Origin: Ruditapes philippinarum
Lineage: Eukaryota
NCBI RefSeq assembly: GCF_026571515.1
Contig: NW_026855183.1
Span: forward strand, 372,001 to 436,000
Direction: 5' to 3'
DNA: 64,000 bases
Under the pieces are notes generated by a model. That model searched no databases. It worked only from the letters and a program-made list of their open reading frames with translations, and had not been told where the DNA came from. Both the position numbers and the translations under genes were made by a program. Positions 1 through 33,700 of the stretch are shown here, one piece after another (positions within the stretch are counted from its first letter, which is position 1; each line of letters begins with the position of its first letter).

Positions 1-110
1 TGTTGAGGGAGTGAAAAGTTATACTCGTACCTTTGTGACATTTACCATTTTAGTTTTTGTTTTACGCTTATCATATAAGATAACAATAAAGCAATCGAAT
101 TAATAAATAC

Positions 111-11228: not shown

Positions 11229-13446
11229 GACATTTGTGTTAACTTTACAGCGCAGCATCCGGTACATTTTACCTGCAGATCTGACCGGACTAAAACGTTC
11301 AGTCAGCAAGGTCAGCGTAAATATGAAGGTAATACTAGTTAAAAGCGGACTAGATCATTGTTAATTTAGAAGCAGTGTCATTTTAACAATCCAGATAAAC
11401 AAAAAAAGCAAAGAGTTTAATTAGCTGCTATTTTATAAATTCTCATGTCTTTCTATATTTCTATATATATATTACTGTATTTAGTTTTTCTACAGTTACT
11501 ATAAATTATATTAAGTAAACGCATGGTCTTATAATAACAGTACACGTATTTAGAAAGGTTTTGAATAGTTATTCACACATGCAGGACCTCCCGCTAACTA
11601 CAACACCGACCCTTATCTCCAAATTAACAAAGCAAAATGACATAACAATTTTAGTTGCAAGATAAAGTCATCAAACATGCAGGCTTTTATCCACATTTTT
11701 ATTTCAATGATAATTTTGAAAGGTATGATTTTCATATAGTTTAAAAACACATCTGAAATAAAGTCTACTCCTTCATTATGATTCTGATTTAACTATTGAT
11801 AGCAATATATTTTTGCATTTTATGAGAGTCTATATTTAAAACAAACATTATTGTTTTAATGTCAGCTTGCGATGCACAACAACGCAACTTTAAGTTGGCC
11901 AGTACAACGATAACAGCCGAGAAACTACAAGAAAAGGTCAATGACTACAGCCAGTGCTACGTTGATGTTGTCGTCCATAATTCATCGTCCTTTCAATTTG
12001 GACTGTTAAATGCTACAGTTATTGCGTTAACAAATGATTCTGGTAAAGTTTATTACGCCGACGGGCTAACGGATATTAACGGTCATGTTTGTCTTCCGGT
12101 TCTCTGTCATAAAGCAATACGCATTTTTGTAGAGAAAAATTCTGTTCGAATTTCTGCACTTAATAAAACGATGCAACAGAGAAATATTCCAAGAGGATTT
12201 AGTGTAAAATTTGAAACAAATAATGAAGTGATTTTATGCATATGCATGGGGAACAGTAGCCGGTAGGTCCGGTCCCGTTTACAGTACAAAAGAGAAAGGA
12301 AAATGCAACGCAGCTCTAACAAGCGATTATCATTTTGTATTTATTTTCTTACATTGCTATTCCCGACAGACTATTGTCGACACTTTCCCCACCTACTAAC
12401 CCAGATGATCCTTCTGATCCGAAGTTTGAAAATGCTTGGAGATATGGTATGACGGGCAACAGACGATCATGCTTTTTAAAAATTAAAATAAAGGTTGGTT
12501 AAAAAAATCAATTCTGTTTTACAATAAATTTCAAACTACATGTATATGCATTATTTTTTTTTTTTTTGCACATTTACTTCAACTAAAATATTTTGCAATT
12601 TATGTTTATAATTTTGTAATTTAAAGGGTTTCCGTCCGAAAAATGTTTGTTTCCGTTTAAAAATTTCTGACCTAAAATTATAAAAAATGATTACAATATC
12701 GTATTTTATTGCTTTTTCAGACCTCTAAACGCAAGTCAAAAAAAGTGATACAAAAACTGGAAATGCAAAGGGAAAAGGGTGTATGGGCTTATTTGAAACG
12801 GGGGCCAAAAATACCTTAATGCAGTGTTTACACGGATAAGGCAGCTTTTAATTTCAGATCCCCGGTTTGGGCTTTGGATGGTGTCGAAATAAAGGAATAT
12901 ACAGGTGGGAATCCAGGATGCTGCATATGTTCTTTCCTAATTTTGTTGTAGATCTATTTGAGAAGAATTATGTAAAGTATACAGAGTTTTATTACCTTGC
13001 AATGTACTTTATATATTAATCATTTAACTATTTAGTTAGAATAATGTAGTACATAAATCAACGGAGGCCAGACACACCATTTGCTTTAAACAGCGATCTC
13101 CATGTTATTTCAATAAATTCAAACATCTTAAAGAATGTGTTACGGTATTATACTTATCAATTGATAGGAATAACTTATCGCTAATGCTTTCAGCAACATT
13201 AGATCAGGAAATATATTCAACGTTGAACGCACAGAATTAAACACGTTCTTTGCAAAGACCAGCACGGACAACTACGGCTCCGAAAAGGGAATCTACATTA
13301 ACCAAGATCCACGTGTTGCACGTGCAAAATGCTTCACTGGTCGTGAATTTCTAGGCTCTGAGTATGCAATGAATGTAAATGTAGGGTATGCATTTGAATA
13401 TGATTGTCTACAGGACCAAGCATGTTCATGTGTTATTGGTAAATAA
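11229..13446 (+). pseudogene. CILP C-terminal-chain-like gene, copy 1 (frameshifted; third exon garbled)
   Basis: Exons 11229-11328 (DICVNFTAQHPVHFTCRSDRTKTFSQQGQRKYE, phase 0/1), 11866-12493, ~12721-12928 (garbled) and 13194-13446. Nearly identical to 21280-22891 but with a 5-nt deletion at ~12230 and a 4-nt insertion at ~12340. Confidence 0.7.
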
Positions 13447-14149
13447 AGATAAAAAGGAAAAAACTCGTTAATTAAATATTTTTTGTCTTAATATTTACTT
13501 CATCATAATAGAAAAAAATGAAAGAGTTCGCTGTAAGTGTTAATTGAAAATAGTTCAAACCATACGAATTGAAATAACATAAACAATTTATATGGAGCAA
13601 CTTGAGTGCGTGTTCCATAAAAACTTACATTCAAAGTTTGAAATCTAGACTCGATTTTCTGAAGCTGCTACAGAATGTAAAGTTGTAAAAACTAACTCAT
13701 TATTTCAAGGGAATTTAACAGCATCATTATGAATATTGGCTATGGTCACGTAACATATTTTGTTGACAACGAGTCTAACGTCTTGGTTTCAGAGTATATA
13801 TGTATGGGAATATCCGTTGTAACTATAAAAGGAAAACAATGAAGCATGTGTGCAAAAATAAATCATTGAATTTGAATAAACGTATCTCACTTTAAACCAC
13901 ACGTTTTTCAAAAGAAAAATCTTTTTAATGCATTAATTTCATGCGGTACACATATTGAATGAAATCAAAGAAATAAAAGAAAATAAAACAACACATCAGC
14001 ATTATTCATATAATATATATCTGATTATTACGTAGATGATAAGAGAAAAAATAAAAGTTTTGTTAAAACTATTTTTGGTTTATTTTTAATTTTCCCTGCC
14101 CTTATATTTTTTTTAAAATTCAGATTGTTTTGTGAATGTTTCCCACATT

Positions 14150-17100
14150 TTATGTTGCAGTAAAATTTCAACAGCTGTGTTTTTGTGTGGGATCATTAAC
14201 CCTTTACATTTGGACCACACAAATCCACTTACAAAATTTGTTAAAATTTTTGGGGGACTGTCCCTTATGAAAATCCATATCGGGACCCCATAATTTTCCC
14301 AGCCTTTGCAATAAATGTGAAGCCAATGTCTCCTTTTGTTGCATCTGTGATATGCGTTATGTTTATCAACGGATTCGTCTTACTGAAAAATAAATGTACG
14401 AATGTATTGTAAAATAATTTCTTTGTTATCAGACTTATTTTGTGGCCCTTTATATCGTTTCAAATTCTACAAAAATGTAAATCGTCACAGTAAAAGGGGC
14501 AATAACTTTTGATAATCATTAAGAAAATATCCAGTCATAAAGTAAAAAGGAATCACAACACATAGCTAAATGTGTAAATGTGCTTGCAAAAGATTAAGCC
14601 CGGTTTGCTAAACTTTTTGACGGAGAAAACAAAGAAATATCATACTTTACCTTTTAATATATAGCTGATTCAGTTATTAAGTAATTATAAGATAATTCTC
14701 AATTTCTGTCATATAGATAAAATATAGATAGAAAGACATCTTGTCATTCAGATTTTAACTGAGGAACGAGAAGTTAGTCTTAAGAAATTTGGTTTTAACA
14801 TGTTTATACCTCAATCAACAGTCAGAATTGTTGATAGGTCCTTAGTTTAAAGAAAAACTTTGACTACCCGTTTTCTTTATGTTTCTCTATTATTGTAAAA
14901 CCATGACTTCATGAATCCTAAGATTTTACATTGGTACGTAAATGAAACAAATAACAGAAAACATATAGCATCATATTTTCACTGTCTATGATAATGTTGT
15001 ACACTGATCTCTGATATTAAAACCATCGCAATAATGATAAGAAAAAAAATATTATAAGGCATTTTTTATGCTTCAGATTTCTTAGACTGACCTGATTTTA
15101 CATCGCAAATTTCTATTTGAAGTTACCATACGAACTTCTATTGCTGTATCCAGGTCAAATATTTCTTTATTGCCGTCTTTGATGTATCCCGGGCATCGAA
15201 ATTCGATACAAGCTCCCCTTAAGGTCAGATCCGTCTTTCTAGGATCAGGAGTTGGCCCTGTAGACGTATGAAAAAAATTTTCATCCCCTTTTGGGACGTT
15301 TTTTTTAAATGATTTTTTTTGAAAAAAAATCTTTATTCAAATGTATCCCCTTTATCTGAAAATAAACAATACTTTTTTTTATATTCATTTTTAAAAAATG
15401 GTTTTTTCATTATTTTTAAATTTTCCATATATATCGGTAACGGAAAAGTATCTCTAGAAAGAATTTTTAAGAGTTTTAAAAAAAGTCTAAGCAAATAAAT
15501 CTTTACGTGTGAGATATCAAATATAACCGTTAAATGTGTGTTTCCGAATATGTATACACCTTACAAATTAAGATAAATGTGTTTTTGTTATGTATTTATA
15601 ACACTAGAATATTTTCAATACTGGTATTATTATAAGATAAATGAAATGCAACTTACATCAACTCGTACTTTCATGAAACAAGACCTGAATGCTGATTTCT
15701 CAGGTGAAACAGGATACCAAGACATTTTCTTATCATAAACCCCTTCACCGGCAACATAATTATGCCCTGGGGCTTTTGTGAATGGTGCAAACTTAAATTG
15801 GAACGTCTGATCATTTATGCCTACTCTGTTACATCTTCCTCCACTGACCTTTTGATACATCGGACCTTCACACACTGTACCAGGTGTGTACATACTGCAA
15901 TCTATCGATCTCCCTAAATCTCTTGACTCAAAAAGTTATTTCATTGTCCAATTTGTTTCTCTTATATATAACGGTGGGTATGGGTAGGTGGTGATTGGCG
16001 GCATAAAATCTTTCTTTACCGTTTGCTGACCAACATGAATATTACTAATTGATCACAAAACACTTGAAGGCAAGTGTGCCCATTTTTCAAATATGTCGCT
16101 GTATTCGCACCAATATATGAGGAGTTGTCTAACTCTTTGACATATGCTTTAATTTCAATGTCCCCACCAGTATATGCTTCTTTAAGTCTCATATCTGTAT
16201 AAACTGATATGCTTGCGTAACATATTCCCGCTTTTGGTGTCCTTCGTACGACATTCTCATACATTTTGACACTGTGGTCGCAATTAGTATACCGTCCTGT
16301 CCAAACGCGTTCATAATGACATCGTTGAACTTACAGATCTGGAATCGCTTGGCGGATGGAAGGAAAGCTTCAATGCTTACAGCTTCAAGAAGCTTCCTTC
16401 TGGTATTAGATTGTCTGTTTATATTTCATCTTGGCTGTTTCTACCCAAACGCCTTTATTGTTGTCATAATCCCATAATGATAAATCGGGATCTCCATTTT
16501 CATCATGTTCAATATTAAATTGTATTTAAAAAAATACAACATTAACAGCAGCAAAGGTTATTATTAAATTCATTCGGGGTATGTTATTAAACATGTTTTG
16601 TATAATTATAAAATGTTTATATATTTAAATGCACTTAGGACGTTTTTTTTTTCTTAAAAAAACAGCTGTTGTTTGCAACAGAAATATACTTACAAAACAG
16701 TTTAACAATATATTATGAATTCCATCTTAAATTATATATATATTAGCATTGTCTGAAGCTATCGAAAATATAAAAAACACTACCTGTTTTACTAAGATTC
16801 GCCATTGTATTCGCAGATGACTCCAGTGCATTGAAATCAGCAATTGGTAATATCCTTGAAGAAGCATTAGTTATTTTGATGAAATTTCCTATCGCAGAGT
16901 CTCCAGCCATGTTAAGAATAAAACATCTTATTCGTTTTGTTTTTAGCAAAGTGCTAATTCTTAAGGCTTCTAGTTCGCTGATTGGCGAGTGAGTCAGAAT
17001 TATTAGTGCTTTCGGTATGCATTTCCTGTCACCAGCTGAATCTGAAAAGCCATTCTTGATTGAAAATTCGATAGCAGTAGAAACATCAATATTCCCTATG

Positions 17101-17486
17101 CTGTACCACATGTATGTTATTGTTTGATTCATCAGCTGGATGTCGTTAAAGGCGTCTAAATTGAACTTGCTGTTGGCAGTGGAGCCGAATGTAAAGAGGC
17201 TTATCAGTGTGTATTTGGTAAAAATCTGCTCTACGAATTCTAAGGCAAATTTCGTCTCATTGTCAAAGTTCTGAGAGCGATAGCTATCGGATGAATCCAT
17301 AAGCAAAGCAACATCCATTATCGGCCGGCCTGTAATTAAACCCATATATAGCTAAACAATACAGTTTTATCTTCATGGTAACTCATACAAAATTCGTCAA
17401 AACATTTAGAACTTACCATTTTCCGAATATACCGAACAAAAAATTGTCAAATACATTAAACATACAAGCGATGTTTTTCCACCCAT
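14150..17486 (-). pseudogene. VWA-CILP-like gene, copy 1 (internally deleted, frameshifted)
   Basis: Intact signal exon 17486-17417 (MGGKTSLVCLMYLTIFCSVYSEN) and intact VWA exon 17329-16784. Homology to copy 2 then resumes abruptly mid-exon at ~16522 (copy-2 position ~26263); the TSP1, Ig and mid-region exons are absent. Indels occur in the remaining exons. Confidence 0.8.
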
Positions 17487-17524
17487 TTTGAATGGATGTA
17501 TCGTTAGCGTTAGGCTCACCTTTT

Positions 17525-17533
17525 CTATTTATA
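17525..17533 (-). promoter_or_regulatory. Putative TATA box of CILP-like copy 1
   Basis: cctccTATAAATAG on the minus strand ~40 nt upstream of the ATG; the same context is conserved in copy 2. Confidence 0.5.
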
Positions 17534-20500
17534 GGAGGCACAGTTGCAAAGGAGGAATTTCATTTCCCTGTCGAGCTGTGTGAGTTTTATATAAAGTCAA
17601 GTTAGCTTTTTGAAGTGATACAACAAGTCAAGATGTCGAACATATTGATAACCGCATTGTGTGTGTGTGTGTGTGATTTACCTCACATGGACAGACACTG
17701 AGATAAACAATTATATCGAAAAAAAAATCAACATAATCATGAAAGTAATATTCAATTCCTTTTTAAGAAATACAAAAATGAAATGGTAAAACAAGTTCAA
17801 TAACAATTTTCAGTATCAATATTTTCATTGACATTATATTTTACAGCTGAAATTATTTGATTTTATTCTGCTTTCTTCAAATTCATTAAGTGAGTCTCGT
17901 GGAACAAAAAAACAATTTTTTTTTTATTTTCGAAAAAGCATTTAATACCAGTAACAACTAAATAAATACATAACATCGAACAAAAAACATGTTGATAAAT
18001 ACAGAAATAGAGGGCAAACATTTGTCTTGGGTATATATTTTCGTATTAGATGGCATCAAATTTTGTATTAAATGGCAACATAAGTTTTGTGCAAGCATTG
18101 ATCTGTATTATTTTTTTTTTTCCATTGTTCGTCTCCAATGAAAACTAGAGGAAAGACAGATAACATGACATCGCATATTCTTAAATTAACCACCGTTATC
18201 TGCAGCGCAAGTAACAATTTCGTGCCCTACTAGAGCAAATAAAAATGCAGGTTGTTTTAGGTGCATGCACTTAAATGTATTATTACAAAACTAGGGGCAT
18301 TTTAAATAGACCTATTTTTTTTATCAAGATCCTTGAACTCCTGAAATTTAATCTCAATTGGACGTTTGCTTGGAAAGCTTGTAACTTCAGTTGTAAACAA
18401 ATGAAGTTTATTGAAATAACATTAACTTGATTGATGTAAAAAAGCATATAACAATTCAGTAAACTACATGCTATTTCGCAAATTTGTTGCCATGGCAAAC
18501 TCGACGAAACTAAAACTTATTGCTATAAGGAAATGGCTCTTTATCTAGATTTTAAAAAAAGTGAAAACCAGTACAATTTTATAAACGCAAAAAACCCACA
18601 TAAAGTCATTCCTTTGGTGAAATTTAGCTTTTAATATCAGGTCTGCCTATTATCCCATTTATGTTATCGCAATAAAACAAACAGACTATTTCATTAGATC
18701 TGAAATTTACGTTGAAGATATTGGATATTTGACAGTTTTTTACAAACACATGCATGTAGAATGTAGAAAATAATGTCATATATAACGCTATAGATCGTGT
18801 ACAAATGATACTTGATGTAAACTTGAAGAATATAACTCTTTTACGTTAGAATCATACATCATGATTGTCAGTTCTTCGGTTAAATCAATTCATACATATT
18901 TATATTGCTATAATTCATACAGTTATCAATTAGAAATCATATTTATGTGCCACTGTATGACACTAATTCCTCCATTTTGCGGCATGTATGCATTCATTGT
19001 CCTTGTTGGCTGCACTTGCTTGTACCTTAGATCATGAAGTGTTTCTATTTTAGGATTAGGGTTATCAAGCTGTCGTCATTTCATGATAATATATGTTAAA
19101 TAGACCTACTATCTTGTCTGATGTTAGCCTAGTGACAATTCAAATATCTACAGGAGGTTTTCTTGAAGGGTTCATATCTTTCTGTTTAGGTCTAATATTA
19201 AACGTTCAAAGCAATGTTTAATAACATTGAACCTTAAAGAAAATATATCCCATTAACAATTTAGATTGAGCTTAGATGTGAAGAACAAAATTACCAAAAA
19301 TATATTAATGAGCCCATTTATTTCTAAAATTGTAAGCCGATTTTATAAAACGATAAAATCATTCTATATTTGTGACACCAGTTTCAATAAAATTTCTGCG
19401 ATATGAAAGAAATTATTTTTCAGTAGAGATTAAATTTGTTTTATTAAATAATATGATTGAAACAATGTCACACGATTTTGAAAAAGTGTGTATGTAATAC
19501 CTTATTCATTTTGTTAGAAGTCGATAACGCTTTATACTTTTCTTAAATATCAGTGATACAGCTATTTTCTGATTAACTCGCTACATGTCATGACATAGAA
19601 GCTCAAACGTTAACTTAATACTTTTGAAATGAACTTCTTTCTGTAAAATACAGTCATTTATGGAATGTTACATCGATAAAGATAATTATCAAGGTGTCTA
19701 GACATTATATTTTGCAACAAGATGATTAAATCTAAAGAGCTAACCATTCTGGTTACAGAGAAGATTTGCAAAACTTTAAACCATTGATTTATTTTCGTCC
19801 TTAAGAGATATTTGTTTTAGCATAACATCTCTTTCAAATGTAACAACACGACGGAACCATTAACGTAGGTGGACACTACATGTATAAAATTTGTGTCTGC
19901 TGATAGAAACGGAATTAATTACAAACACACATATGCACACATCATATGTAGCTAAGTGTGTTAACTTAAGTGCTAATTAACACAACATGATATTAATTTA
20001 TATTAATAACAGCTCCTACCATGGTCCAAAATACGAATCATTCCATAAAAGACGACACCGCTCACCGGCGTCGAGAATGATATGGTTAAGTAATAAATAA
20101 CAAAAGGTTATCATAGATGCTTTGTTTTGATGCCTTCGTGCCATTTCATTAAAAAAGTGTAAGAGTTATTTTCCTAAAAAAAGCCGTTACCTTTGCCGCC
20201 CACGAATAGACTCAAATCGAGTCAGCAAAAAAAGTTAATTGTCTGCTTTTGAGCATTCTTAAAGATTAACATTATTTTACAATAATTATACAATACCAAA
20301 GAAGGAAATATTTGAAACACGTAAAGACAAAAAAGATGAAATAAAGAAAAACCGAGATTTGAAATAAAGTATCGTTTATCGTACTCACAACAACACTTTG
20401 TCCGGAATGCTGATGGATTTCTTACCATCATCTAGTAAGTGGTCTTTAACAAGGTCTTTTATCTATGTCGTCCACAAATGTTTTGCCATAGAAGGTGATA

Positions 20501-21279
20501 TAGAAAAAAGAAGTCAGTTGCTGACACAATAATTAACAATGAAAGTCTCTTCATTTGTGTTCTTTTTTATGAAAACTTTAAAATTGTGCTTAAGTGTACG
20601 TCACATTTAGTGATTCAATATATACATAGCAATTACATCCATCTGGTCATTAAAAAGCAGAAATAACTCTTACTTTGTTAGTCTTATGCAGATGTTGATG
20701 ACAAATATAGTCAATTTTGTTACATTTTTAATTCGTTTTATTGACACTGTTATAAGGGATGTTAAAACTATCGATACTATTTATTTGAAATTAGCATTTT
20801 TAAGATTTGTTTATCTCTTCGTAAATTGTCATTTTAATAAGATTAGTTTTAGTCGCTGCTGCTTTGTAATTATCACTATACATAATTTAGTTCTATTAAG
20901 TAAAAACTTTTGTTCCTAATAACTTAGATATTCAAAACATAAGTTTACATGTTTATAAAATTTGGAATATTTATTCACACATGCAGGACCTCCCGCTAAC
21001 TACAACACTGACCCTTATCTCCAAATTAACGAAGCAAAATGGCATAACAAATTTAGTTGCAAGATAAATTCATCAAACATGCAAGCTATTATCCACATTT
21101 TAATGTATATGATAATTTTGAAAGGTATGATTTTATATAGTTTAAAAATACATCTGCATTCATTGCATTTGAAAGAAAGTCCAATGTTTCATATTAATTC
21201 TAATTGACTATTGATAGCATAATATTTTAACATTATTATGACTGTGTATTTAAAACTAACTGTATTGTTTTAATGTCAG

Positions 21280-22891
21280 GTTGCGATGCACAACAACGCA
21301 ACTTTACGTTTGCCAGTACAACGATAACAGCCGAGAAACTACAAGAAAAGGTCAATGACTACAGCCAGTGCTACGTTGATGTTGTCGTCCATAATTCATC
21401 GTCCTTTCAATTTGGACTGTTAAATGCTACAGTTATAGCGTTAACAAATGATTCTGGTAAAGTTTACTACGCCGACGGGCTAACGGATATTAACGGTCAT
21501 GTTTGTCTTCCTGTTCTCTGTCATAAAGCAATTCGTATTTTTGTAGAGAAAAATTCTGTTCGAATTTCTGCACTTAATAAAACGATGCAACAGATAAATA
21601 TTCCAAGAGGATTTAGTGTAAAATTTGAAACAAATAATGAAGTGATATTATTTTATGCATATGCATGGGGAACAGTAGCCGGTAGGTCCGGTCCCGTTTA
21701 CAGTACAAAAGAAAAAGGAAAATGCAACGCAGCTCTAACAAGCGATTATCATCTTGTGTTTTCTTACATTGCTATTCCCGACAGACTATTGTCGACACTT
21801 CCTCCACCTACTAACCCAGATGATCCTAATGATCCGAAGTTTGGAAATGCTTGGAGATATGGTATGACGGGCTCCAGACGATCATGCTTTTTTAAAATTA
21901 AAATAAAGGTTGGTTCAAAATATCAATTCTGGTTTACAATTAATGTCAAACTCTTGCATTTATCTTTTGTTTTTGCACATTAACTTCAAACTAAATTTTT
22001 TTGCAATGTAGGATTATAATCATTTGTACATTTAAATGGCTTATCCGTCCGAATAATGTTTTGTTTCCGGTTATAACAATTTTTTGACCTATACGATTAT
22101 GAAAATGATTACTAATATCGTATTTCATTGCATTTCAGACCCTCTCAACGCAAGTCAAAATAAGTGCATACAGCAAACTGGATAATGCAAGTGGAACGGT
22201 GTATGGCTTATTTGAAACTGGGCCAAAATACGACGTTAATGCTGCTGATTACACGGATAAGGCAGCTTGTGTAGAGTTCAGATGCCCGGCTATTGGTACA
22301 TTGTATGGTGTCGAAATGTCTACCTATATCGAAGGAAATATCGAGGTACCAGGACATTCCAACGGATGCTGCATAAGGTCCTTTTCTAATTTTGTTGTAG
22401 ATCTATTTGAGAAGAATTATGTAAAGTATACAGAGTTTTATTACTTTGCAATGTACTTTATATATTTATCATTTAACTATTTAGTTAGATTAATGAAGTA
22501 CAAAAATCAGCGGAGGCCGGGCACTCCATTTGCTTTAAACAGCGTTCTCCATTTTATTTCAATAAATTCAAACATCTTAAAGAATGTGTTACGGTATTAT
22601 ACTTATGGATATGAATAACTTATCGCTATTGCTTTCAGCAACATTCGATCAGGAAATATCTTCAACGTTGAACGCACAAAATTCAACACGGTATTAGCAA
22701 TGACCAGCACGGACAACTACGGCTCCGAAAAGGGAATCTACATTAACCAAGATCCGCGTGTTGCACGTGCAAAATGCTTCACTGGTCGTGAATTTCTAGG
22801 CTCTGAGTATGCAATGAATGTTAATGTAGGATATGCATTTGAATATGATTGTCAACAGGACCAACAATGTTCTTTTGTTCTTGGTAAATAA
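21280..22891 (+). CDS. Protein homologous to the CILP C-terminal chain only, copy 2 (5' exon(s) not identified)
   Basis: Open exons 21280-21908 (phase 1/0), 22139-22377 (phase 0/2; an alternative phase-2 donor exists at ~22426) and 22639-22891, with AATAAA overlapping the stop. Motifs shared with the neighbouring CILP C-terminus: NGHVCLPVLC/NGHTCLQVFC, GPVY/GPMY, RSCFFKIKI/RSCFMKVRV, AACVEFRCP/GACIEFRCP, NYGSEKGIY/NYGSRYGIF, FEYDC/VEFDC. Confidence 0.75.
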
Positions 22892-23130
22892 AGATAAAAA
22901 AGGAAGAAAACACGTAAATTGAATATTCTTTTAAACTATTTTATCGTTATGACTTTTCTAAGAGTTTTACTAAATCAGGAACCGAACATTGAGTGATGTA
23001 TACACATGTTCTAACCAGTTCAGCTGCATAACAATTAATCTGATGTTATCCGATTACGCATATCCTGAAAGCTTCCAACATGTGTGATTATTATCATTTT
23101 TCATAAGATTGAACATATGTGCACTATATG

Positions 23131-23215
23131 CAAGTAAGTAAGTAAGTGAGTGAGTGAGTGAGTGAGTGAGTGAGTGAGTGAATGCGTGTGTGAGTGAGTG
23201 AGTGAGTGAGTGAGT
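23131..23215 (+). repeat. (AAGT)/(GAGT)n microsatellite
   Basis: Directly visible tetranucleotide run; lies in sequence absent from the copy-1 intergenic region. Confidence 0.95.
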
Positions 23216-23816
23216 AAAGACTTTATTTATCGAGGCAACACATTTGGTTTCTCAATCTTCTACGTTGGCCTCTAAACATATAACAATGTGTTCTATTTGA
23301 ATCCGAGTGGTTTACCTTAAACAATGTTTTAACATTTTACCGCTTCGGAATGTAAGGTTGTAAAAGATAACTCATTATTTCAAGGGATGTAATAACATCA
23401 TTATGAATATTGGCTACGATCGCGTATCATGTTTTGTTGACAATGAGACTTACGTCATTTGTTCTCAACTACGGTTTCACATTATATACGTATGTGAGTA
23501 TGCATAGTAAATATCAAAAGAAATCAAAGAAGCATTTGTGCATAAATCACTCATTGAATTTGAAAACACGCATCTCTCTTTGAACCAAACGTTTTTTTTC
23601 AAAACAAATCTTTTTAAAGCACATATATTGAATGAAATCCAAGAAATAAAATAACACATCAGCATTATTCATATAATATATATCTGATTATTACGTAGAT
23701 GATAAGAGAAAAAACATAATAAGCATATTGTTAAAACTAGTTTTGGTTTTATATAATTTCCTGTCCTGTTATATTTGTTTCAAATGTCAGATTGACTTGT
23801 GAATGTTTCCCACATC

Positions 23817-26800
23817 TTATGTGCAGTCAAATTCAACAGCTGTGCTTTGTGTCGGATCCATTAAGCCCTTTACATTTGGACCACGATCAAATCCACTATC
23901 ACAGAATTGTTCAACTTGTTTTGGGGTACTGTCGCTAATGAAAATACCATATCTGGATCCATAATTTATCCCTGCCTTTGCAATAAATGTGAAGCCAATG
24001 TCTCCTTTTGTTGCATCTGTGATAGGCGTTATGTTTATCAACGAATTCGTCTTACTGAAATATTAAATGTACGAATGTGTGGTAAAAGTGATAATATATT
24101 TTTTATATATTTGATATCTGATTTATCTGGTAGCCATTGAAATCGTTTCAAATTCTACAAAAATGTCAATCGTCACGGAAAAAGTGGTAATAAACATTAG
24201 ATAAATATGAGAGAATTCTTCAATCATTAAAGGAATCACAACACATACGTAGATGTGTAAATATGATTGCAAAAGACTTAACCCGGTTTGATAAACGCTT
24301 TGACGTAGAAAAGTACAAATGAAACAAAATATCATTCACTTATTAATATATAGCTGATTACGTTATTAAGTAATTATAAGATAATTATCATTTTCTGTCA
24401 TATAGATAACGTAAAAATAAAAGTCATCTTGTCATTCAGATTTTAACTGAGGAACGAGAAGTTAGTCTTAACAAATTTGGTTTTAACAATTAATATCTCA
24501 ATCAACAGTCAGAATTGTTAGTAGGTCCGCCCAGGAAAAGCAATGATTTGACTCATATTACGTCAAACACCACCAGTACACATGTTTATAAAATAGTCTA
24601 AAGGAAAGCGTTGACTACCCGACTTCTTTATGTTTCTCAATTATTGTAAAACCTTGACTTCATGAATCCTAAGATTTTACATTGGTACATAAATGAAACA
24701 AATAACAGAAAACACATAACATCATAGTATCACTGTCTATGATACTGTTGTACACTGGTCTCTGATATTAAAACCATCGCAATAATGATATGAAAAAAAT
24801 ATTATAAGGCATTTTGTATGCTTCAGATTTTTTAGACTGACCTGATTTTACATCGCAAGTTTCGATTTGAAGTTACCATACGAACTTCTATTGCTGTATC
24901 CAGGTCAAATATTTCTTTATTGCCGTCTTTGATGTATCCCGGGCATCGGAATTCGATACAAGCTCCCCTTACAGTCAGATCCGTTTTTCTAGGATCAGGA
25001 GTTGGCCCTGTAGAGTATGATCCAAATTCATCCCCGTTGACGTCTTTTAAATGACTCTTTGCAAAAAATCGTATATCAAATGTATCAACTATCTGAAAAT
25101 AAAACAATACAATTTTTGTTCATTTCATATTCATTCTTTAAATAGTTTGTCATTAAACAATCCCATATGTATTGGTGACGAACAAATATCTCTAGAAATA
25201 ATGGAATGAGTTTTAAGAAGACTCTAAGCTAAAAAAAAAGCTTAACGCATAAGATATCGAATATGACCATTCAATGCGTGTATCCGAATATGTATACACC
25301 TACAAAAGTTGAGATAAACATGATATTGTAATGTATTTATAACACTTGAATATTTCCATACTGGTATTATGAACTTGCATTATTATTAGGTAAATGAAAT
25401 GCTACTTACATCAACTCGTACTTTCATGAAACAAGACCTAAATGTTGATTTCGCAGGTGAAACAGGGTACCAAGAAAGTTTCTTATCATATACGCCTTCA
25501 CCGGCAACATAATTATGCTCTGGGGCTTTTGTGAATGGTGCAAACTTAAATTGGAACGTCTGATCATTTATGCCTACTCTGTTACATCTTCCTCCACTGA
25601 CCTTTTGATACATCGGACCTTCACACACTGTACCAGGTGGGTACATACTGCAATCTATTGATCTCCCTAAATCTCTTGACTCAAAAAGTATTTCATTGTC
25701 ATTTGTGTCTCTTATATATCCCGGGTATGGTAGGTGGTGATTGGCGGCATAAAATCTTTCTTTACCATTTCTTACAACATGTATATATACCAATTTATCG
25801 CAAAACACTTGAAGGCAAGTGTGCCCATTTCTCAAATATGTCGCTTTATTTGCACCAATATATGAGGAGTTGTCTAACTCTTTGACATATGCTTTAATTT
25901 CAATGTCCCCACCAGTATATGCTTCTTTAAGGTTCATATCTGTATAAACTGATATGCTTGCGTAACATATTCCCGCTTTTGGTGTCCTTCGTACGACATT
26001 CTCATATATTTTGACACTGTGGTCGCAATTAGTATACCGTCCTGTCCAAACGCGTTCATAATGAACATCGTTGAACTTCAGATCTGGAATCCTTGGCGGA
26101 TGGAAGAAAGCTTCAATGCTTACAGCTTCAAGAAGCTTCCTTCTGGTATTAGATTGTTGTTTATATTTCATCTTGGCTGTTTCTACCCAAACGCCTTTAT
26201 TGTTGTCATAATCCCATAATGATAAATCAGGATCTCCATTTTCATCATGTTCAATATTAAATTGACTTGCATCAAGTGTAAATTTCAAAGGTTTATTGAC
26301 TTTGAGTTCTTTTCCTTTGTCATCTTCAATACTCAACTGAAACATTCCATAAGTCTTTAAAGGAACTTTATCCCCTCCAGGCGATTCGCTTTCAAAGTCT
26401 CCATTTGCAGATTCAATATCATCCCTATTCCTCGGATCCATAAAATGCAGTATCGTTTTGGCAGTACCATTAAAAGGCTGTCCATCTGGCGTGACGATAG
26501 CATTTGTAGGAATCGACAGTTGTCCTGCTGGGGGCATCCCAGATGGACCTGTCCCTAAATGTATTTCAGTGCCGTTTTCAGTGTGGAACGGTATTGGTTG
26601 TGGACGTAGTGGAATAACTATTGTGGAAAATGTTTCCCCTCCTTCTTTAACCTGGATTATTTTTGTGGTGTCCATGAATTTTTTAAATACTTTGTCATGA
26701 AAAGTAGCTACAACACGCTTTATTCCTTTAGGTACATCGAATTTAAAAAATCCTGCAGCATTTGTTGTTGCTGCAATTTTACCATTAACAAGAACTTGTC

Positions 26801-29800
26801 CAATTCTAAAAGGAATATCTGTACCATTCTGCCTACCAAAAGCTCTTCCTGTTACAGTCGTTTTAAACACGCATGGTTTGCACTCACAAGACTTTATTCT
26901 AGTAGTTTTGTAACTAAATCCATCGCATGTAATATCAAGGACATCTACGTCTTTAGCGTTACAACAGTGATGTGGCCAGTAATCACTGCAAGATCCATTA
27001 TCATGCAAAGACGATTTCATGCATAATGCTTTGCCACAGTCTCCAACGTTAATTGTGTTGTTTCTGCTAGTGTTACTTGTAAGGTAACATCCATGTGGAA
27101 GCTCCTGTAACTTTGAATGTGGGGCTCCACAAGTATCTTCCTTAAAATCTACAGAGGTTATTGTTTGTTAAATATAAAGTTTTAAAATAAACATAGTATA
27201 TATAGAATCTGTGATCACATTTCTGACTTATTAAACAAACAAAAAAATATAATGTATGCACAGAATCAAATACATATTCAAAGAAAATGTATTTGATATG
27301 AGTTTAAATAAGAGATGAAAGTTTATGAATATCAAATAGTTTTATCATAGAAATAAAACCTTTCTTTATCCTAGCATGCACCCAAAGGTCTCTTTTTCTT
27401 ACAGAAATACCCTTCAAGCTAAATCAATTTGTTTAAAACATTTAAATGCAAATTTGAATTTTTCTTTTGTTGTTTGTTGATATTTTGTACACACTATTTT
27501 ACTATTTCAAACGGACTACTTGAAATAAACAGAGATTACAATTACTTTATAACATAAACAACAAATTTGGAATAATATACAAAACGTTATAGGTTACCAT
27601 GAACTTCAACTTGAACATCCTCCGATAAAGTCACTCCTGCTTCTGTCTCGGTATAGCAATGATAGGATCCACTGTCAGACTTTTGTACAGATGAAAATTT
27701 TAGGGTTCCATTTGTACCTAAATTTTCCAGTTCTATTCCATTTTTGAACCTTATGAAGATACCATGATATCATAAATGATGATGAATTGTTATTCAACTT
27801 AATAAAATATGTATAAAATTATGGGCATATCATTTTATAAACCATTTATATGAACTACTATTGATTGAATTTCATTTCATTACGAAAATACTTAAATTTG
27901 TAAAGTCAATTATCACTTATAGCGATGGCTTACATATATGATTGAATGCATGCATGTAATCATTATGAAATAAATGAATTGTAAAGTACCATTTGAAAGC
28001 AGATGGGACAGGCTTCCCATCAGCTGCACAGCAAAGACTTAAACTCTGTCCAACCATCCGAACTTTATCATGCGGCTGAACCGTGATAACTGGAGGTACT
28101 GCAATTATAAGGGCGTAAAGACAATGTCATACAAGTATTAAAGTGTGAAAATGAGAAATAATAATGGTAAAATAAATATATGAAATATACACTACATTTT
28201 AATACAATTTTGTATGATACAAGATTTTGTAGAAAAGATAAATAAAGTAATCTGAACATCTTTAATATTCACACTTCTATTTAATGAAATAATATTTAGT
28301 TTTACATTGAAATGTACCAAGTAAGATGCTTACTGTATTTCTCAAGCGTCGCATTTATCAGTGTCCAATGCGTAGCATTCAGTTCCTTTGGTGCAAAATG
28401 TTTACTTTCACATGTTGGAGCTTGTATGTAAATATTTTCGTTTAAAATGCATATGCCTGTCTTGCTGAAAATTCCAAACCTGTCTGTTTTTGCGATTGGT
28501 TTATACTTGCTCGACTCTAGAAATATCTCTGCCCCTTCGACGGCATGTTTCGTAGTATCCATTATTTGTCCAAACAGCGTTACACTTGAGCACTCACATG
28601 CATCACATGATTTAGAAATATGTGCACCGGCTGGGCAAGCCTTGTTGCAATCTAAAAAAAGAAACAGACTTAACGTAATTTATTATTATGACATGTTTAG
28701 TCTTATAGGCACAGAGTATTTGTATAGCACAACAATATTGTTGATTCATGGATGAAATCATATGTTAACAAATGCAATGTTTAATGTTGTTCTTATATAA
28801 CTACACTATAGTGAATCAATATGGCTTTGTCCGGAGCAATTCTTGAAGTACTTTTGCACTTCAAGTAACACAATGTCATACGAGAAAATAACGCTTACGT
28901 TTTATTTTATTGTTAAGCAACTCATTGTTTTAGATCTTTTTGTGTGGTACGAAAACCTAAATTTAAGTACAAAACATCATTCAAGTGCATAATCTGAGAC
29001 ATCCATTTACTGAATATGCAAATTTATACATAATATGTCCAAACCAAACCTGGACATTTCCATTCTGCACAGGGTCTCGTCTGAATTCGTACTCCAGGGC
29101 AGCTCTTTCCCCCATTCCTTGGCTGTGGCCGGTCACATTGTCTTGTTCGCCTTTGCGTTCCATTCTGACAAGTTTTTGTACAGGTTCCCCAATTTACCCA
29201 ATCAGACCATGCGCCATTGACAGGTTCTTGTAAGTAAAAGATAGTCATGAACTTATTCTCTCAATTGCGGTTAGGAGACAAGGAGTCACTTTTCAAAAAT
29301 AAGTTTGTATTATGTAAAGTTATTATTCTTAATATATCTCTAGCTCTTAATATACGTTAGCAAAATGTGTTGATCCAATTTTTGTAGATTATCAAACACT
29401 TACCTGTACAGTTTGGCATGATACAAACTGACTCTTCCGTAAATTGTCCTTCACAATCTTTATCTGTATCTTCCAATTTTATGCAGTGTCTTGAACGGAA
29501 TTTCAAGCCAATATCGCATGTAACACTGCATGTTGTCCAATTTCCCCAACCGGAAAACCTTCCACACCCAGTACTCGGGAGATCTTGAATGGAAGATATT
29601 GAGTATAAAATAATACAAATAACAACATTAAAGAACGTTTGATACTCAAGGGTATCTGAGATATCTTGGAGTAAAATTAAACAAAATCCAATAGAAAACA
29701 TTTAAAAAAAAAACTAAATTTGTTCTAAGTATGTTCTTATACATATTTTGCATAGGTGATCAAACTATTAAACTTGTAGATGATGTTTACAATTAGTTAT

Positions 29801-30712
29801 ACAATTATACTAGACTGTCATTATAGTCAGCTATATTTACATGACCCCCTATATTACGCATTTTAGAATGCACGCACAAACGGCGCGTATTTTTATCCGT
29901 TAATGCACGATGTCTTCTCTGTTGATGTAAACTTGTGTGTACAGTTTCTATACATATCAGCATTATTATTAAATGAATCAAACAAATTACAATTAGACAG
30001 TACCTGTTTTAACAAGACTCGTTATTGTGGTCGCAGATGACTCCAATGCTGTGAAATCAGTAATTGGTATTGTTCTTGTTGAGGCATCGGTGATTGTGAT
30101 AAAATTTGCATTCGCTGAGTCTCCAGCCATGTTAAGAATAAAACATCGTATTCGTTCTGTTTTTAGCACAGTGCTAATTCTTAAGGCTTCTTGTTCGCCG
30201 ATAGGCGAGTGAGTCAGAATTACTAATGCTTTTGGGACGCATTCCCGGCCGCCAGCAGAATTTGAAAAGCCATTCTTGATTGTGTATTCGACAGCAGTAG
30301 AAACATCGCCATCCCCTGTGCTGTACCACATGTACGTTATTGCTTGCTTCATAAGTTGAATGTCATTATAGGCGTTTAATGTGAATTGACTGTAAGCACT
30401 GGAGCCGAATGTGTAAAGACTGATCTGTGCGTATTTGTTAAAAGTCTGCCTTACGAATTCTAAAGCAAACTTCTTCTCATTGTCAAAGTTTTGAGACCGA
30501 TGGCTATCAGATGAATCCATGAGCAAAACAACATCCATTTTCGGTTGGTCTAGAATTGAGAAAAAACACATTATGGCAAACAATAAATTTTCAACTTTAT
30601 CATAATACATTCAAAAGTCGTAAAAAAAACTTTAGTACTTACCATTCTGCAAATATACCAATCCAAAAAGAGTCAAACAAAGGCAAAATGCAAGAGATCC
30701 TTTGACACCCAT
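23817..30712 (-). CDS. CILP: Cartilage intermediate layer protein (CILP)-like secreted matrix protein with an N-terminal VWA domain, ~1259 aa
   Basis: Ten phase-consistent GT-AG exons: 30712-30643 (signal peptide), 30549-30004 (VWA, DSSDS), 29583-29404 (TSP1), 29226-29050 (TSP1), 28651-28334 (Cys-rich + beta-sandwich), 28098-27990 and 27749-27598 (Ig: SLCCAADGKPVP..W..DSGSYHC), 27148-25410 (CILP core: FMDPR, PLKTYGMF, LWDYD..GVW), 25092-24842 (ACIEFRC) and 24054-23817. Total 3780 nt with no internal stop. The symbol denotes family, not proven orthology. Confidence 0.9.
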
Positions 30713-30752
30713 ATTGAGTGGATGTTTGATTCGCGATTTAGTGACGTGCTTT

Positions 30753-30762
30753 CTTATATATA
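30753..30762 (-). promoter_or_regulatory. Putative TATA box of CILP-like copy 2
   Basis: cctccTATATATAAG on the minus strand ~40 nt upstream of the ATG, positionally conserved with copy 1. Confidence 0.5.
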
Positions 30763-33700
30763 GGAGGAGCTTTTACAAAAGAGGAAGTTTTTACCCTGTT
30801 CGGGCTGTTGATAAATTTTATATAAATCTGTGAAGTGACACAAAATGTCAAGATATTTTTTGTGTTTTTCCCAGTATGTGTACTCCAGAAACTCATGAGA
30901 TCAGCAATCTTTGAGAAAAAAGTATAGGCTCTATTCATGGAAAGATTATTCATTCAGTTTTGAGAAAATAAAAACATGGTTAAAAGAGTTCAATGACAAT
31001 TTTGTTTTATTGTCAGTGTTTTTTTTTTTTGACATTCATTGACATTGTGTGTTTGATGTTTTATTTGAAACTATTGGAAGAAAAAAATCAACTGTTATTC
31101 TAAACTATATACATGTATTTTCGTTTCTTGTCTTTTTAAATTGTTGGTGTACTTCATATCTTTGTATATTGTCTAAATATTTATGTTAATTTTCGATTTA
31201 GACAAAATAATCTGTTTTTAAAATTCCTAATCCATAAAGCTACGTCTATGTAAAGTCTAAAGAAACAAAACCGAAATTAGGTCTAACGGTAAAAAAAAAA
31301 CTTTTATGAAAACTGCAGTAAACGCCAAGATGAACATAGTTACATTATATCAAGCAAAACAAATATTTTGTTAAATATTACATGTATCTGAAACCATAAT
31401 ATTATTAAGACGATCATTCTTTATATTTGGTATCTGTTTCAGTGGCATGAACACGCTCTTACACAATTGTTCAGTGAACGCATTGATCTCTATTTGATTT
31501 TTTGTATTTCAGTATTTTTCATTTACAATGATATTTAGAGGTCATTAAAACACTTGAAAAGATTGATAACATGTCACGTGAACGTGCATATTTTTAAATT
31601 AGACATTTTTATCTGCAAGGTCCCAGCGCAAGGTTAATCGTTTCATACCCCACAAGAACAGTTAAAATGCACGTTATCCTAGGTGCATGCGCTCTGATTT
31701 AAGCTACAAAAAATAAAAACAATTTATTGTAAGTCCGGGAATTTAAAATGAAAAGAGGTTTTCGTGATAGGGTTTTTTTTTGGTTTTGTGTTTTGCATGG
31801 TCTGCTAAAGGTCAAGCCCTTTGATTAACAAGACTTAAGCTTTTGCTTTAGAAACAACAATGGAAACCTTACAAGATCCTATAATATACAGAATAACGGA
31901 CTAACAAGGTAGATAATCAGTGTCATTCTAGCAACACTAGAGCTATTCAAGTACTCCAGAGTTACTGTTCTTGATTATTCACAGCATTTTGAAATATTTT
32001 CGTCCGCTCTCTTATGGTGGCGTCTGTATACATAAACTATCGATTATAATTATGGAGAATCTTTAGAACTAGAAAACCTGATCAGGTGGTGTTGTTAAAG
32101 GTTACATGTATACAGATTCACATACTTTTGTTGCACTGATAAACCCTAGATTTTTTGTCGTAAACTATTTTGTGGTAATACATGAAATTGGTTTTAAAAA
32201 ATAGTTTCAATTCGCTTGTTGATTAATAACAATTTAATTTCTTTGTGTCTGAAAATTCAAGTCAGGGTTACGACAGTATATGAGTGCATGCAAGCATAAA
32301 ATAATGTTTAACAGTAACTGTCATTGTTCTAAACAACTTGGGAACATGATATTCATGTTCCATTTACACATTAATCTAATGTCAATTGCCTCTCAGCAGT
32401 AATTCAGAATATATAAGGGTGTATATAGCAAGTTACATGTGGAGAAATTGGTAACGACGCCAGGAAAGTTTGTTACGTGGATCGACCGCTGCTGAGATAT
32501 GACCAGCCTTGTGTACAAAATCAGAAAAGCAAACAATTAAATTAATACATTTCATTTCGTAATTGGTTAAAACTTTACTCTGAACGAAACGATAATCTCC
32601 CGCATTCACTATTTAAATAGAACAAAAATGATATTTGTTTAGTATATCATAACAACCAGCAGCCAATGATTTAGATATAAATTAATTTTTATTGCATAAA
32701 CTTTCTTTTACATGCAATTTTCAGGTACGCCATGTACAAATGCTATAGCAACAAGTGAAACAAAAATGTATTACTCATATAGATATGAAAAGGGAAGTTT
32801 GAATTATTGACATTTGAATTGTTTGGTCCAATGCTACTTTTTCTGAAATGTTTAAATAAACTGCGATTATCAGTATTTACATGTACCTTGAAAACGAAGT
32901 GAATGTAGATTATATTCACATGTACCATACTTCAACTTTGATTATGCATATCGAAGTTTATCCTCAACAATGTTTGCTTATGTCATTTGCTCAAAAGTAC
33001 CTGACAATCCTATTAATTGAATCAGTTATAAACGAATGAGATCAATAGTTCGTCTTCCCTATACCAGAATTAATTTCTTTTTGTCCGATTGAACACACAA
33101 ACAGACAGAGAAATGAAACTGACCTAACATTATAATTCCATTTATTCGTGATCACAAATGAAATAAAACTAAAACAGTAAACAATGTATCACATCAACTT
33201 TTCTAGAATATCAACTTGAAGATATCTTAACTTTGGTTTTAGATGTTGTATGAATGTTGTGTTCCTGTTTCAAAACGCTTATTAGGTGGTACTCAGGCTC
33301 ATTGCTGCATTAATAACTGAGGTTAAAGGGGGAAGTAAAGAGGAAAAAGTCGTCGTAGAAACTTGAAATGGTTAGTGTTTTTTCATTCCAAAACGAACAA
33401 AATAATGTCTAAATATAAAAAAGATATATCGTTGTTAAAGAAAATACATGGACAATAATCTTGAATTTTTGTGCAATTATTGTTAAGATGTTGTAACAGG
33501 TATATTTGAATAAACACGCAAGTAATAGAATAGTGACAATAATGCCAGTGCGCCAACGCAACGTGGCCTCTAAGTTGAATGTATAATTTTTGAACCGCCA
33601 GTCATATTATTCGCCTGGTAGTCTTATATCCACCAACTGAAAACTGTCTTCATTATTAATTTACTTAGACAGTCTGTCGCGAAACTCATGGTGCGGCAAA

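What the first reader, a model, noticed from the sequence alone, without database searches (positions are those of the whole stretch)
21280..30712. Full-length CILP-like gene paired tail-to-tail with a gene encoding only the CILP C-terminal chain
Seen: the plus-strand gene is a strongly diverged homologue of only the last ~450 aa of the convergent CILP-like gene. It shares the Cys motifs and two intron positions (phase 0 after RSCFxKxx, phase 2 in C-x-I-S). In copy 1, its most 5' recognisable exon (11229, DICVNF...GQRKYEACD) aligns loosely with SIEAFF...TGRYTNCD, immediately downstream of the CILP basic processing site RRKLL. Known: vertebrate CILP1/2 are proproteins cut into N- and C-chains. 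Inference: this could be a gene-encoded free C-chain (a split or decoy partner) that is co-located and co-duplicated with its parent. Its three exons stay open despite deep divergence, which suggests selection. Caveat: no signal-peptide exon was found.
Basis: partly seen in the sequence, partly recalled or inferred. Interest (0 to 1): 0.78.

Follow-up and report, generated by a model that had tools for sequence, protein, structure and literature searches.

The report
Clam gene for CILP's C-terminal half
In the Manila clam, a small expressed gene encodes a secreted protein made only of the last two domains of the matrix protein CILP, and it sits tail-to-tail with a full-length CILP-like gene; such short genes are old in bivalves, so this is a modest new variant of a known family.

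Summary
The core observation holds. On the minus strand, window 30610-23817 carries a nine-exon CILP-like gene A: VWA, two TSP1 domains, Ig, CILP core and C-terminal region. On the plus strand, 21079-22891 carries a four-exon gene B of 388 codons.

- **Homology:** B is homologous, exon by exon (28/39/31% identity), only to the last ~370 residues of A. It shares two intron positions and phases with A.
- **Expression:** RNA contigs confirm two B introns and show A-runs just past the stop codon.
- **Missing first exon:** it lies at 21079-21124 and encodes a signal peptide. It matches the RefSeq model of the other haplotype (Ruditapes philippinarum LOC132738825, 388 aa, CILP_C above Pfam threshold).
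not supported.
- **Origin:** B is not a recent copy of its neighbour (AU p 3.6e-6). Short forms of 337-414 aa occur in clams, scallop and oyster and form one clade (90/85).
- **Linkage:** all 3 short loci found in this genome lie 1-11 kb from a long form.
- **Copy 1:** the in-window pair at 11.5-17.6 kb is a decayed duplicate absent from the other haplotype.
- **Selection:** dN/dS for B is 0.27.
- **Processing site:** RRKLL is not a furin consensus.

The decoy or partner role is untested. This is a new variant of a known family, of moderate interest.

The parts
21079..21124 (+). Gene B exon 1: start codon and signal peptide (15 codons plus 1 base, phase 1 donor G|GTATGA)
   Evidence: Sequence read and splice sites. 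It matches the N-terminus of RefSeq protein P0001 from the allelic contig. The junction to exon 2 was not seen in reads here.
21280..21908 (+). Gene B exon 2: N-glycosylation motif near the mature end and a transthyretin-like beta-sandwich (CILP_8th-like)
   Evidence: Acceptor and donor. RNA contigs cover 21350-21908, with a joint 21906>22137 in X1. 28% identity to A's big exon. Weak CILP_8th hit. Fold match Z 7.4.
22139..22377 (+). Gene B exon 3: first part of CILP_C
   Evidence: RNA joints at both ends: the first in X1, the second in X1 and X8. 39% identity to A exon 25092-24842.
22639..22891 (+). Gene B exon 4: end of CILP_C and stop codon. A-run loose ends in X8 contigs at 22901 and 22910.
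   Evidence: 31% identity to A's last exon.
29993..30610 (-). Gene A exon 1: start, hydrophobic N-terminus and VWA domain
   Evidence: ORF. VWA 5.9e-23. Aligns to Mya P0028 residues 9-201.
29405..29590 (-). Gene A exon 2: first TSP1 repeat (limits from the tblastn block)
29051..29227 (-). Gene A exon 3: second TSP1 repeat (limits from the tblastn block)
28335..28652 (-). Gene A exon 4: Cys-rich stretch plus beta-rich module. No Pfam hit.
27593..28117 (-). Gene A exons 5 and 6 (28117-27986 and 27748-27593): Ig domain split by an intron
   Evidence: Weak Ig_3. Blocks against Mya P0028 residues 423-517.
25410..27137 (-). Gene A exon 7: CILP core, basic motif RRKLL, and the part homologous to B exon 2
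   Evidence: PF23591 5e-13. 56% identity to Mya P0028 over 579 columns. Donor at 25410. Motif alignment.
24842..25092 (-). Gene A exon 8: homologue of B exon 3, ending with a phase 2 donor
23817..24054 (-). Gene A exon 9: last exon and stop codon, 926 bases from B's stop
11677..13446 (+). Copy 1 of gene B, broken: frame changes in the exon-2 counterpart and a decayed exon-3 counterpart
   Evidence: The ORF stops early at 12266. tblastn shows a frame change. There is a 5-base loss and a 4-base gain.
14150..17376 (-). Copy 1 of gene A, broken: it lacks the counterpart of 26264-29997 (TSP1, Ig, CILP core) and changes frame within the big exon
   Evidence: The whole copy-1 block is absent from the other haplotype contig C2542.

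Best explanation
**What it is.** Gene B is a working member of an old bivalve family of short secreted proteins. Each consists of a signal peptide followed only by the two C-terminal beta-sandwich modules of CILP: a transthyretin-like 'CILP_8th'-type module and the CILP_C module.

**Origin.** The family most likely arose once, by partial duplication of a long CILP-like gene. It has since stayed next to long-form genes, and whole pairs have been duplicated.

**This locus.** In the window the pair is inverted to a tail-to-tail arrangement. A second, decayed copy of the pair is a structural variant of this haplotype only.

**Shown here**
- B's gene model, splicing and expression.
- Homology limited to the C-terminal part of A.
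- Age and single clade of the short forms.
- Linkage with long forms.
- Purifying selection.

**Inferred.** The product is secreted, N-glycosylated and disulfide-bonded. It acts in the extracellular matrix as a free CILP C-module, doing from its own gene what vertebrates obtain by furin cleavage of CILP. It is a binding or structural protein, not an enzyme.
For: **Gene model**
- The four exons all have GT..AG sites and sum to 388 codons.
- Translated, they are 83-95% identical to the 388-aa RefSeq protein P0001 in the tblastn blocks. P0001 sits on a 36,851-base contig, the length of own-genome contig C2542.

**Expression**
- 19 of 24 listed runs hold part of the stretch; 6 of them are on record as RNA, from 11 studies.
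- Both downstream introns appear as joints, with A-run loose ends just past the stop.

**Domains and fold**
- CILP_C scores 36.1 bits against a cut-off of 27 on P0001, P0002 and P0003.
- The model has pLDDT 88.2 and is all-beta. Domain 1 resembles transthyretin, carboxypeptidase-D and CnaB sandwiches at Z 7.1-7.4.

**Signal peptides**
- All 11 short forms examined have a hydrophobic N-terminus.
- The C1278 paralogue has its start codon and signal peptide in the same exon as the domain.

**Age**
- Short forms occur in Mercenaria, Mactra, Mizuhopecten and Ostrea.
- The 12 short rows fall on one side of a branch at 90/85.
- A clade of window A plus window B is rejected, p 3.6e-6.

**Linkage**
- Window: 0.9 kb, convergent.
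- C1278: about 4 kb, tandem.
- C10109: about 11 kb, tandem.
- The trees of long and short partners agree for the window and C1278 pairs, 100/99 each.

**Selection**
- dN/dS is 0.27 for B and 0.11 for A's last three exons.
Against: - The exon 1-exon 2 junction and the transcript's 5' end were not seen in the reads laid here. Contigs begin at 21350 and 21403. Exon 1 therefore rests on the RefSeq model of the other haplotype and on splice signals.
- The signal peptide is short (15-16 residues) and was judged by hydropathy only.
- The short clade has moderate support (90/85), and long branches are present in the tree.
The Mizuhopecten and Mercenaria short and long representatives sit on contigs of different lengths. 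The Mactra pair shares a 41 Mb contig but is not shown to be adjacent.
- Nothing here shows what the protein binds.
- The CILP_C part has no clear structural relative (best Z 5.5).
Confidence: 0.8

Rival explanations
1. B is the 3' part of an ordinary long CILP paralogue whose upstream exons (TSP1, Ig, CILP core) were missed.
For: The 5' end of the transcript was not captured. Stranded raw reads of X21 lie at low depth (0.37-0.39) upstream of exon 2, at 20852-21245, in the same orientation as the exon reads.
Against: - tblastn with A's exons finds no TSP1, Ig or CILP-core match on the plus strand anywhere upstream of B.
- The next gene upstream is copy 1 of A, on the other strand.
- The RefSeq model of the allele and 10 further short forms start with a hydrophobic leader directly before the domain.
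- The low X21 depth fits exon 1 or its 5' UTR.
Confidence: 0.04
2. B is a 5'-deleted relic of a duplicated long gene. It is transcribed but has no function.
For: Copy 1 in the same window shows that such relics arise here: both of its genes are broken. B evolves faster than A, with dN/dS 0.27 against 0.11.
Against: - The frame is intact over 388 codons and splicing is correct.
- Eight cysteines are invariant across the ten short forms aligned.
- Orthologues or paralogues of the same length occur in five bivalve genera.
- dN/dS is well under 1.
Confidence: 0.06
3. The short gene is a regulated partner or decoy of the neighbouring long form. Most bivalve long forms would no longer be cut, and the free C-module would be supplied from the linked gene, with linkage kept by shared regulation.
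For: - 10 of 17 long forms aligned carry x-R-K/R-L-L where 5 others carry R-x-K/R-R. Of the 8 bivalve-named among those 10, all have the L-L form, and only Saccostrea among bivalves has the furin-type site.
- All 3 short loci are next to long forms, and the pair trees agree.
Against: - Cleavage of the clam long form was not tested, and other convertases may cut after R-R-K.
- Linkage may be plain inheritance of a tandem duplicate.
- Adjacency in other species is unknown.
Confidence: 0.15

Closest known systems
C-terminal chain of vertebrate CILP-1 / CILP-2, released at a furin consensus site
   Same: B matches the Pfam model of that region, CILP_C PF23599, above threshold, with a weak CILP_8th match. 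Like the free vertebrate chain, it would exist without the TSP1/Ig N-terminal half. A review states that CILP2 is cut at a furin consensus site into free N- and C-terminal parts, and that the C-terminal part has no nucleotide pyrophosphatase activity (PMC12839030, passages read). The all-beta models agree with a non-enzyme.
   Different: B is made from its own gene with its own signal peptide, not by cleavage. In the alignment its mature end lies after the position of the basic site (about 35 residues by eye). No vertebrate protein was among the 53 HMMER hits, so the relation to vertebrate CILP rests on the Pfam model and on the long bivalve forms.
RefSeq 'uncharacterized protein LOC132738825' of Ruditapes philippinarum (P0001), and its like in Mercenaria, Mizuhopecten, Ostrea and Mactra
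   Same: P0001 is the same gene on the other haplotype contig. It is 95% identical over exon 2, has the same length (388 aa) and the same exon 1. The others are 337-414 aa proteins with a leader plus the same two modules.
   Different: These are database entries without names or study. The window's allele differs at about 24 nonsynonymous sites and lies beside an extra, decayed copy of the pair.
Bivalve 'cartilage intermediate layer protein 1-like' long forms (Mya P0028, R. philippinarum P0018, Mizuhopecten P0041)
   Same: Gene A is one of these, 41-58% identical to Mya P0028 across the nine exon blocks. B shares their C-terminal modules, cysteines and two intron positions.
   Different: B lacks the VWA, TSP1, Ig and CILP core. 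The long forms of these bivalves carry an N-terminal VWA domain that the CILP2 review does not list for vertebrate CILP.

Membership tests
CILP family, C-terminal region (Pfam CILP_C PF23599) | Match to the CILP_C model above its gathering score | tested here: met
   P0001 (the allele of B) scores 36.1 bits against 27. P0002 scores 36.4 and P0003 39.2. Single window exons alone stay below threshold. A joined window model was not searched, by rule.
CILP family, C-terminal region (Pfam CILP_8th PF23730) | Match to the CILP_8th model above its gathering score | tested here: inconclusive
   Scores are 16-21 bits against a cut-off of 27, covering only profile positions 137-166. Homology of this part to the long forms is shown by BLASTP (E 4e-8) and HMMER.
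Full-length CILP (as in vertebrate CILP-1/2) | N-terminal half with TSP1 repeat, Ig domain and CILP core domain | tested here: not met
   This holds for gene B: none of these domains is in P0001 or on the plus strand upstream of B. Gene A has all of them, plus VWA.
Full-length CILP (as in vertebrate CILP-1/2) | Furin consensus R-x-K/R-R between the N- and C-terminal halves | tested here: not met
   Gene A has T-R-R-K-L-L at the aligned position. 10 of 17 long forms share the L-L form, 5 have R-x-K/R-R, and 2 have neither.
Full-length CILP (as in vertebrate CILP-1/2) | Proteolytic release of a free C-terminal chain | not testable with these tools
   This needs protein work on clam tissue.
Nucleotide pyrophosphatase (the old label for the CILP C-terminal half) | An NPP-type catalytic fold | tested here: not met
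   Both modules are beta sandwiches. The top 50 of 48,161 chains in each search were mostly non-catalytic sandwich modules, with best Z 7.4 and 5.5. The review passages say no such activity exists.

The most novel reading that the evidence does not exclude
In bivalves the two-chain CILP system may have been resolved into two linked genes. Long forms whose furin site decayed to R-R-K-L-L would stay uncut. A neighbouring short gene would supply the free C-module. The pair would be kept together, and duplicated together, because they work or are regulated as a unit. That would give a natural genetic separation of the unexplained CILP C-terminal half from the TGF-beta/IGF-binding N-terminal half.
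Probability: 0.15. Interest if true: 0.65.

Novelty: new variant of a known kind. Interest (0 to 1): 0.42.

Why it matters
The function of the C-terminal half of CILP is still unclear in vertebrates, where it exists only as a cleavage product of a larger protein. A conserved, separately encoded and expressed version offers a simple handle. It can be expressed, localised or knocked down without touching the N-terminal half, and its persistent linkage to long forms can be tested for shared regulation or binding. For genome annotation, the work gives a family assignment to a set of 'uncharacterized' bivalve proteins. It also flags a haplotype-specific decayed duplicate that could be mistaken for extra genes.

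Tried and rejected
**Ideas rejected**
In the other haplotype it has indels and a GT>GC donor, it has no counterpart before the copy-2 gene, and it is not in the RefSeq model.
- A recent origin of B from its neighbour A was rejected by the tree and the AU test. The tested group was named after the tree was seen.
- In-window co-duplication as a sign of selection was rejected. Copy 1 is broken and is absent from contig C2542.
- An origin of the short forms on the bivalve side of the tree could not be rejected (p 0.20), so the age beyond Bivalvia stays open.

**Searches that gave little**
- The profile search for more short forms found only 7 proteins and no new taxa.
- The Atlas search scored 0.85 or less, so it is a lead only.
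- Foldseek against the PDB gave TM-scores of 0.21 or less.
- Earlier-findings look-ups were blank.
- Paper searches for CILP in molluscs found nothing relevant in the held library. One search was too loose to be informative.
- Supplementary proteomics tables, which might list these proteins, are closed.

**Errors of mine**
- One search was wasted by a wrong year filter.
- held one row in a wrong reading frame. It was corrected, and only searches are used.
- The gap settings over-split the divergent exons. Only the two indels in the B exon-2 counterpart, the shortened exon-3 counterpart and the large deletion are used from it.

Full report
**Organism and locus.** The window is contig C3670:372001-436000 of a 1.41 Gb assembly. 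The best database match of gene B is a RefSeq protein of Ruditapes philippinarum, P0001. It sits on a contig of 36,851 bases, the length of own-genome contig C2542. I therefore take the genome to be the Manila clam. C2542 is colinear with the window over most of its length at 80-98% identity and is read here as the other haplotype.

**Gene A (minus strand).**
- ORFs and Pfam give VWA (5.9e-23), two TSP_1 repeats (about 8e-10 each), a weak Ig_3, the CILP core domain PF23591 (5e-13) and weak CILP_C traces.
- tblastn with the 1252-aa 'CILP1-like' protein of Mya arenaria (P0028) covers its residues 9-1252. It does so in nine blocks between window 30586 and 23820, at 41-58% identity.
- The last two introns were read from the sequence. 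The big exon ends at 25410 with a phase 0 donor GAT|GTAAGT. The next exon runs 25092-24842 and ends in phase 2. The last exon is 24054-23817.
- A is thus a full-length CILP-like gene with an added N-terminal VWA domain.

**Gene B (plus strand).**
- RNA contigs of two runs from different studies lie on it at 95-100% identity. The joint 21906>22137 is seen in X1, and the joint 22375>22637 in X1 and X8. Both are GT..AG with the cut two bases further right.
- A-run loose ends lie at 22901 and 22910, just past the stop.
- Of 24 runs listed, 19 hold part of the stretch. Six of these are on record as RNA, and the holders come from 11 studies.
- The contigs begin at 21350 and 21403, so the reads laid here do not show the 5' end.
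- The open frame reaches back only to 21231, and an acceptor lies at 21279.
- 155 bases upstream, 21079-21124 reads ATG plus 14 mostly hydrophobic codons and one more base before G|GTATGA.
- P0001 begins with the same leader, with two substitutions, joined to the same next residues.
- The four exons sum to 1,167 bases, that is 388 codons plus the stop, which is P0001's length.
- I take this as the gene model. Exon 1 rests on the RefSeq model of the other haplotype, on the splice signals and on phase, not on reads seen here.

**Homology between A and B.**
- Exon by exon, BLASTP gives 28% identity over 156 columns (E 4e-8), 39% over 46 (E 3e-12) and 31% over 48 (E 5e-4).
- Both introns inside the shared region are at the same place and phase in the two genes.
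- The shared span is A's last ~370 residues, not 450.
- On P0001, Pfam gives CILP_C at 36.1 bits (cut-off 27) over residues 212-377. It gives a sub-threshold CILP_8th match at residues 149-178.

- The stretch 11229-11327 lies outside the duplicated block, which starts at 11523-11549.
- In C2542 its counterpart has two one-base gaps and a GC in place of the donor GT.
- It has no counterpart in 17700-21079, upstream of the expressed copy (best local score 18 over 42 bases).
- It is not in P0001. I reject it, and with it the alignment that placed B's start right after the basic motif.
- In the 22-row alignment, B's mature end falls between the motif and the first conserved cysteine. I put it at roughly 35 residues past the motif by eye; no call measured this.

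**The basic motif.** An alignment of 17 long forms puts A's T-R-R-K-L-L in the column block where 5 sequences have R-x-K/R-R: Saccostrea, Ptychodera and three unnamed ones. Ten have x-R-K/R-L-L: four Ruditapes loci, Mercenaria, Mactra, Mya, Mizuhopecten and two unnamed. Two have neither: Owenia and one unnamed. The site is therefore positionally the CILP processing site, but in most bivalve long forms it is not a furin consensus. Whether it is cut is unknown. For vertebrates I rely on passages of a CILP2 review. They describe cleavage at a furin consensus site into free N- and C-terminal parts, and a C-terminal part without pyrophosphatase activity (PMC12839030).

**The two copies in the window.**
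- blastn shows 11549-17634 as a copy of 20952-30854, lacking the counterpart of 26264-29997.
- In copy 1, B's exon-2 counterpart changes frame: its ORF stops at 12266, with a 5-base loss and a 4-base gain. The exon-3 counterpart is shortened and holds an in-register stop.
- A's copy has lost the TSP1, Ig and CILP core and changes frame in the big exon.
- Assembly indels could mimic small frameshifts, but not the 3.7 kb deletion.
- C2542 passes from the B gene straight into the sequence that lies upstream of copy 1 in the window. Copy 1 is therefore a haplotype-specific, decayed tandem duplicate. It is no evidence that selection keeps the pair together.

**The family.**
- A full HMMER scan of 1.84 billion representatives with P0001 found only 53 proteins at E <= 0.001.
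- Among those looked up, short proteins of 337-414 aa come from Mizuhopecten, Mactra and Ostrea, and Mercenaria adds one more.
- Long 'CILP1-like' proteins come from Ruditapes, Mya, Mercenaria, Mactra (there named Hemicentin-1), Mizuhopecten and Saccostrea. They also come from the annelid Owenia and the hemichordate Ptychodera.
- All 11 short forms examined start with a hydrophobic leader. Eight cysteines are invariant among the ten aligned.
- In a maximum-likelihood tree of 25 rows, the 12 short rows lie on one side of a branch (90/85) and the 13 long rows on the other. Window B sits in a starred venerid clade. Window A groups with Mya and the C1278 long form (100/99).
- Holding window A and window B together costs 181 log-likelihood units (AU p 3.6e-6).
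- Holding the four non-bivalve or unnamed long rows together is not rejected (p 0.20). The short family may therefore have arisen on the bivalve stem or earlier.
- Long branches are present, and the root is not inferred.

**Linkage.**
- Six-frame searches of the whole genome found three short loci: the window with its allele C2542, C1278 and C10109. They found four long loci with the homologous C-part: the window with its allele, C1278 and two on C10109. They also found more distant CILP-core genes. These counts are lower bounds.
- Each short locus lies beside a long one. In the window the distance is 926 bases, stop to stop, convergent. On C1278 it is about 4 kb downstream on the same strand. 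On C10109 it is about 11 kb downstream on the same strand.
- The C1278 short gene has its start codon and signal peptide in the same exon as the domain. It is closest to the Mercenaria 400-aa protein.
- The window and C1278 pairs are nearest relatives in both the long and the short parts of the tree. This fits duplication of the pair as a unit.

**Selection.** Against the C2542 allele, B has 23 synonymous and 24 nonsynonymous differences over 386 codons: dS 0.098, dN 0.027, ratio 0.27. A's last three exons give 0.11. This is one pairwise comparison between haplotypes. It is enough to argue against free decay, but not to measure constraint finely.

**Structure.**
- AlphaFold2 with a 22-row alignment gives pLDDT 88.2 and pTM 0.80.
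- Residues ~40-184 align to transthyretin-like, carboxypeptidase-D regulatory and CnaB-type sandwiches at Z 7.1-7.4. That level is described as common, so it indicates a fold class only.
- The CILP_C part folded alone (pLDDT 88.5) has no match above Z 5.5.
- Neither part resembles an enzyme fold.

**Verdict.** The missing first exon exists and encodes a signal peptide. The gene is expressed and constrained. It is, however, a member of an old bivalve family, not an offshoot of its neighbour. The in-window 'co-duplication' is a decaying structural variant. The proposed link to the processing site does not hold in detail. The partner or decoy idea remains open. Its most interesting form is that most bivalve long forms lost the furin site while a linked gene supplies the free module, and I give that about 0.15. 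No paper in the held library treats CILP in molluscs or a C-only CILP gene. The proteins are already in RefSeq as uncharacterized entries.

Noticed in passing
window 11523-20957: A tandem block of about 9.4 kb holding the decayed pair is present in this haplotype but absent from the colinear contig C2542. The two haplotypes differ by about 5-20% in aligned DNA. This is a large presence/absence variant.
   Followed up: partly
window 100-396 (-): An open frame with a TSP1 repeat followed by an EGF-like Cys pattern. It has a weak tblastn match to A's first TSP1 exon and probably belongs to another matrix gene that runs off the window's start.
   Followed up: no
window 34914-35438 (-) and 57878-58231 (+): Two open frames, each encoding a Ser/Thr-rich, mucin-like stretch followed by a hydrophobic, membrane-anchor-like segment.
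   Followed up: no
window 36818-38537 (-) and 63613-63879 (-): A row of adjacent open frames that look like fragments of a non-LTR retrotransposon reverse transcriptase, and an open frame that looks like a mariner-type transposase fragment. These labels are from recall and were not tested.
   Followed up: no
G000:C10109 (L012-L014, L019-L021, L024): One 91 kb contig carries two long CILP-like genes (33996-22748 minus strand, 59430-69848 plus strand) and one short gene (80772-85052 plus strand). The database model of that short gene, P0015, stops at 302 aa and may lack its last exon.
   Followed up: partly
own genome, contigs C10283, C5787, C1661, C7739, C11732, C5247, C13227: At least ten further matches to the CILP-core part only (23-31% identity, open frames mostly of about 660-760 aa), with no match to the C-terminal part. 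They may be a wider set of CILP-core genes with other C-termini.
   Followed up: no
protein P0050 (Mya arenaria, 304 aa): Another architecture: a leader, an EGF-like Cys-rich part, then a CILP_C-like part only (one search match to P0001 residues 175-376; sequence). The C-module seems to have been reused more than once.
   Followed up: no
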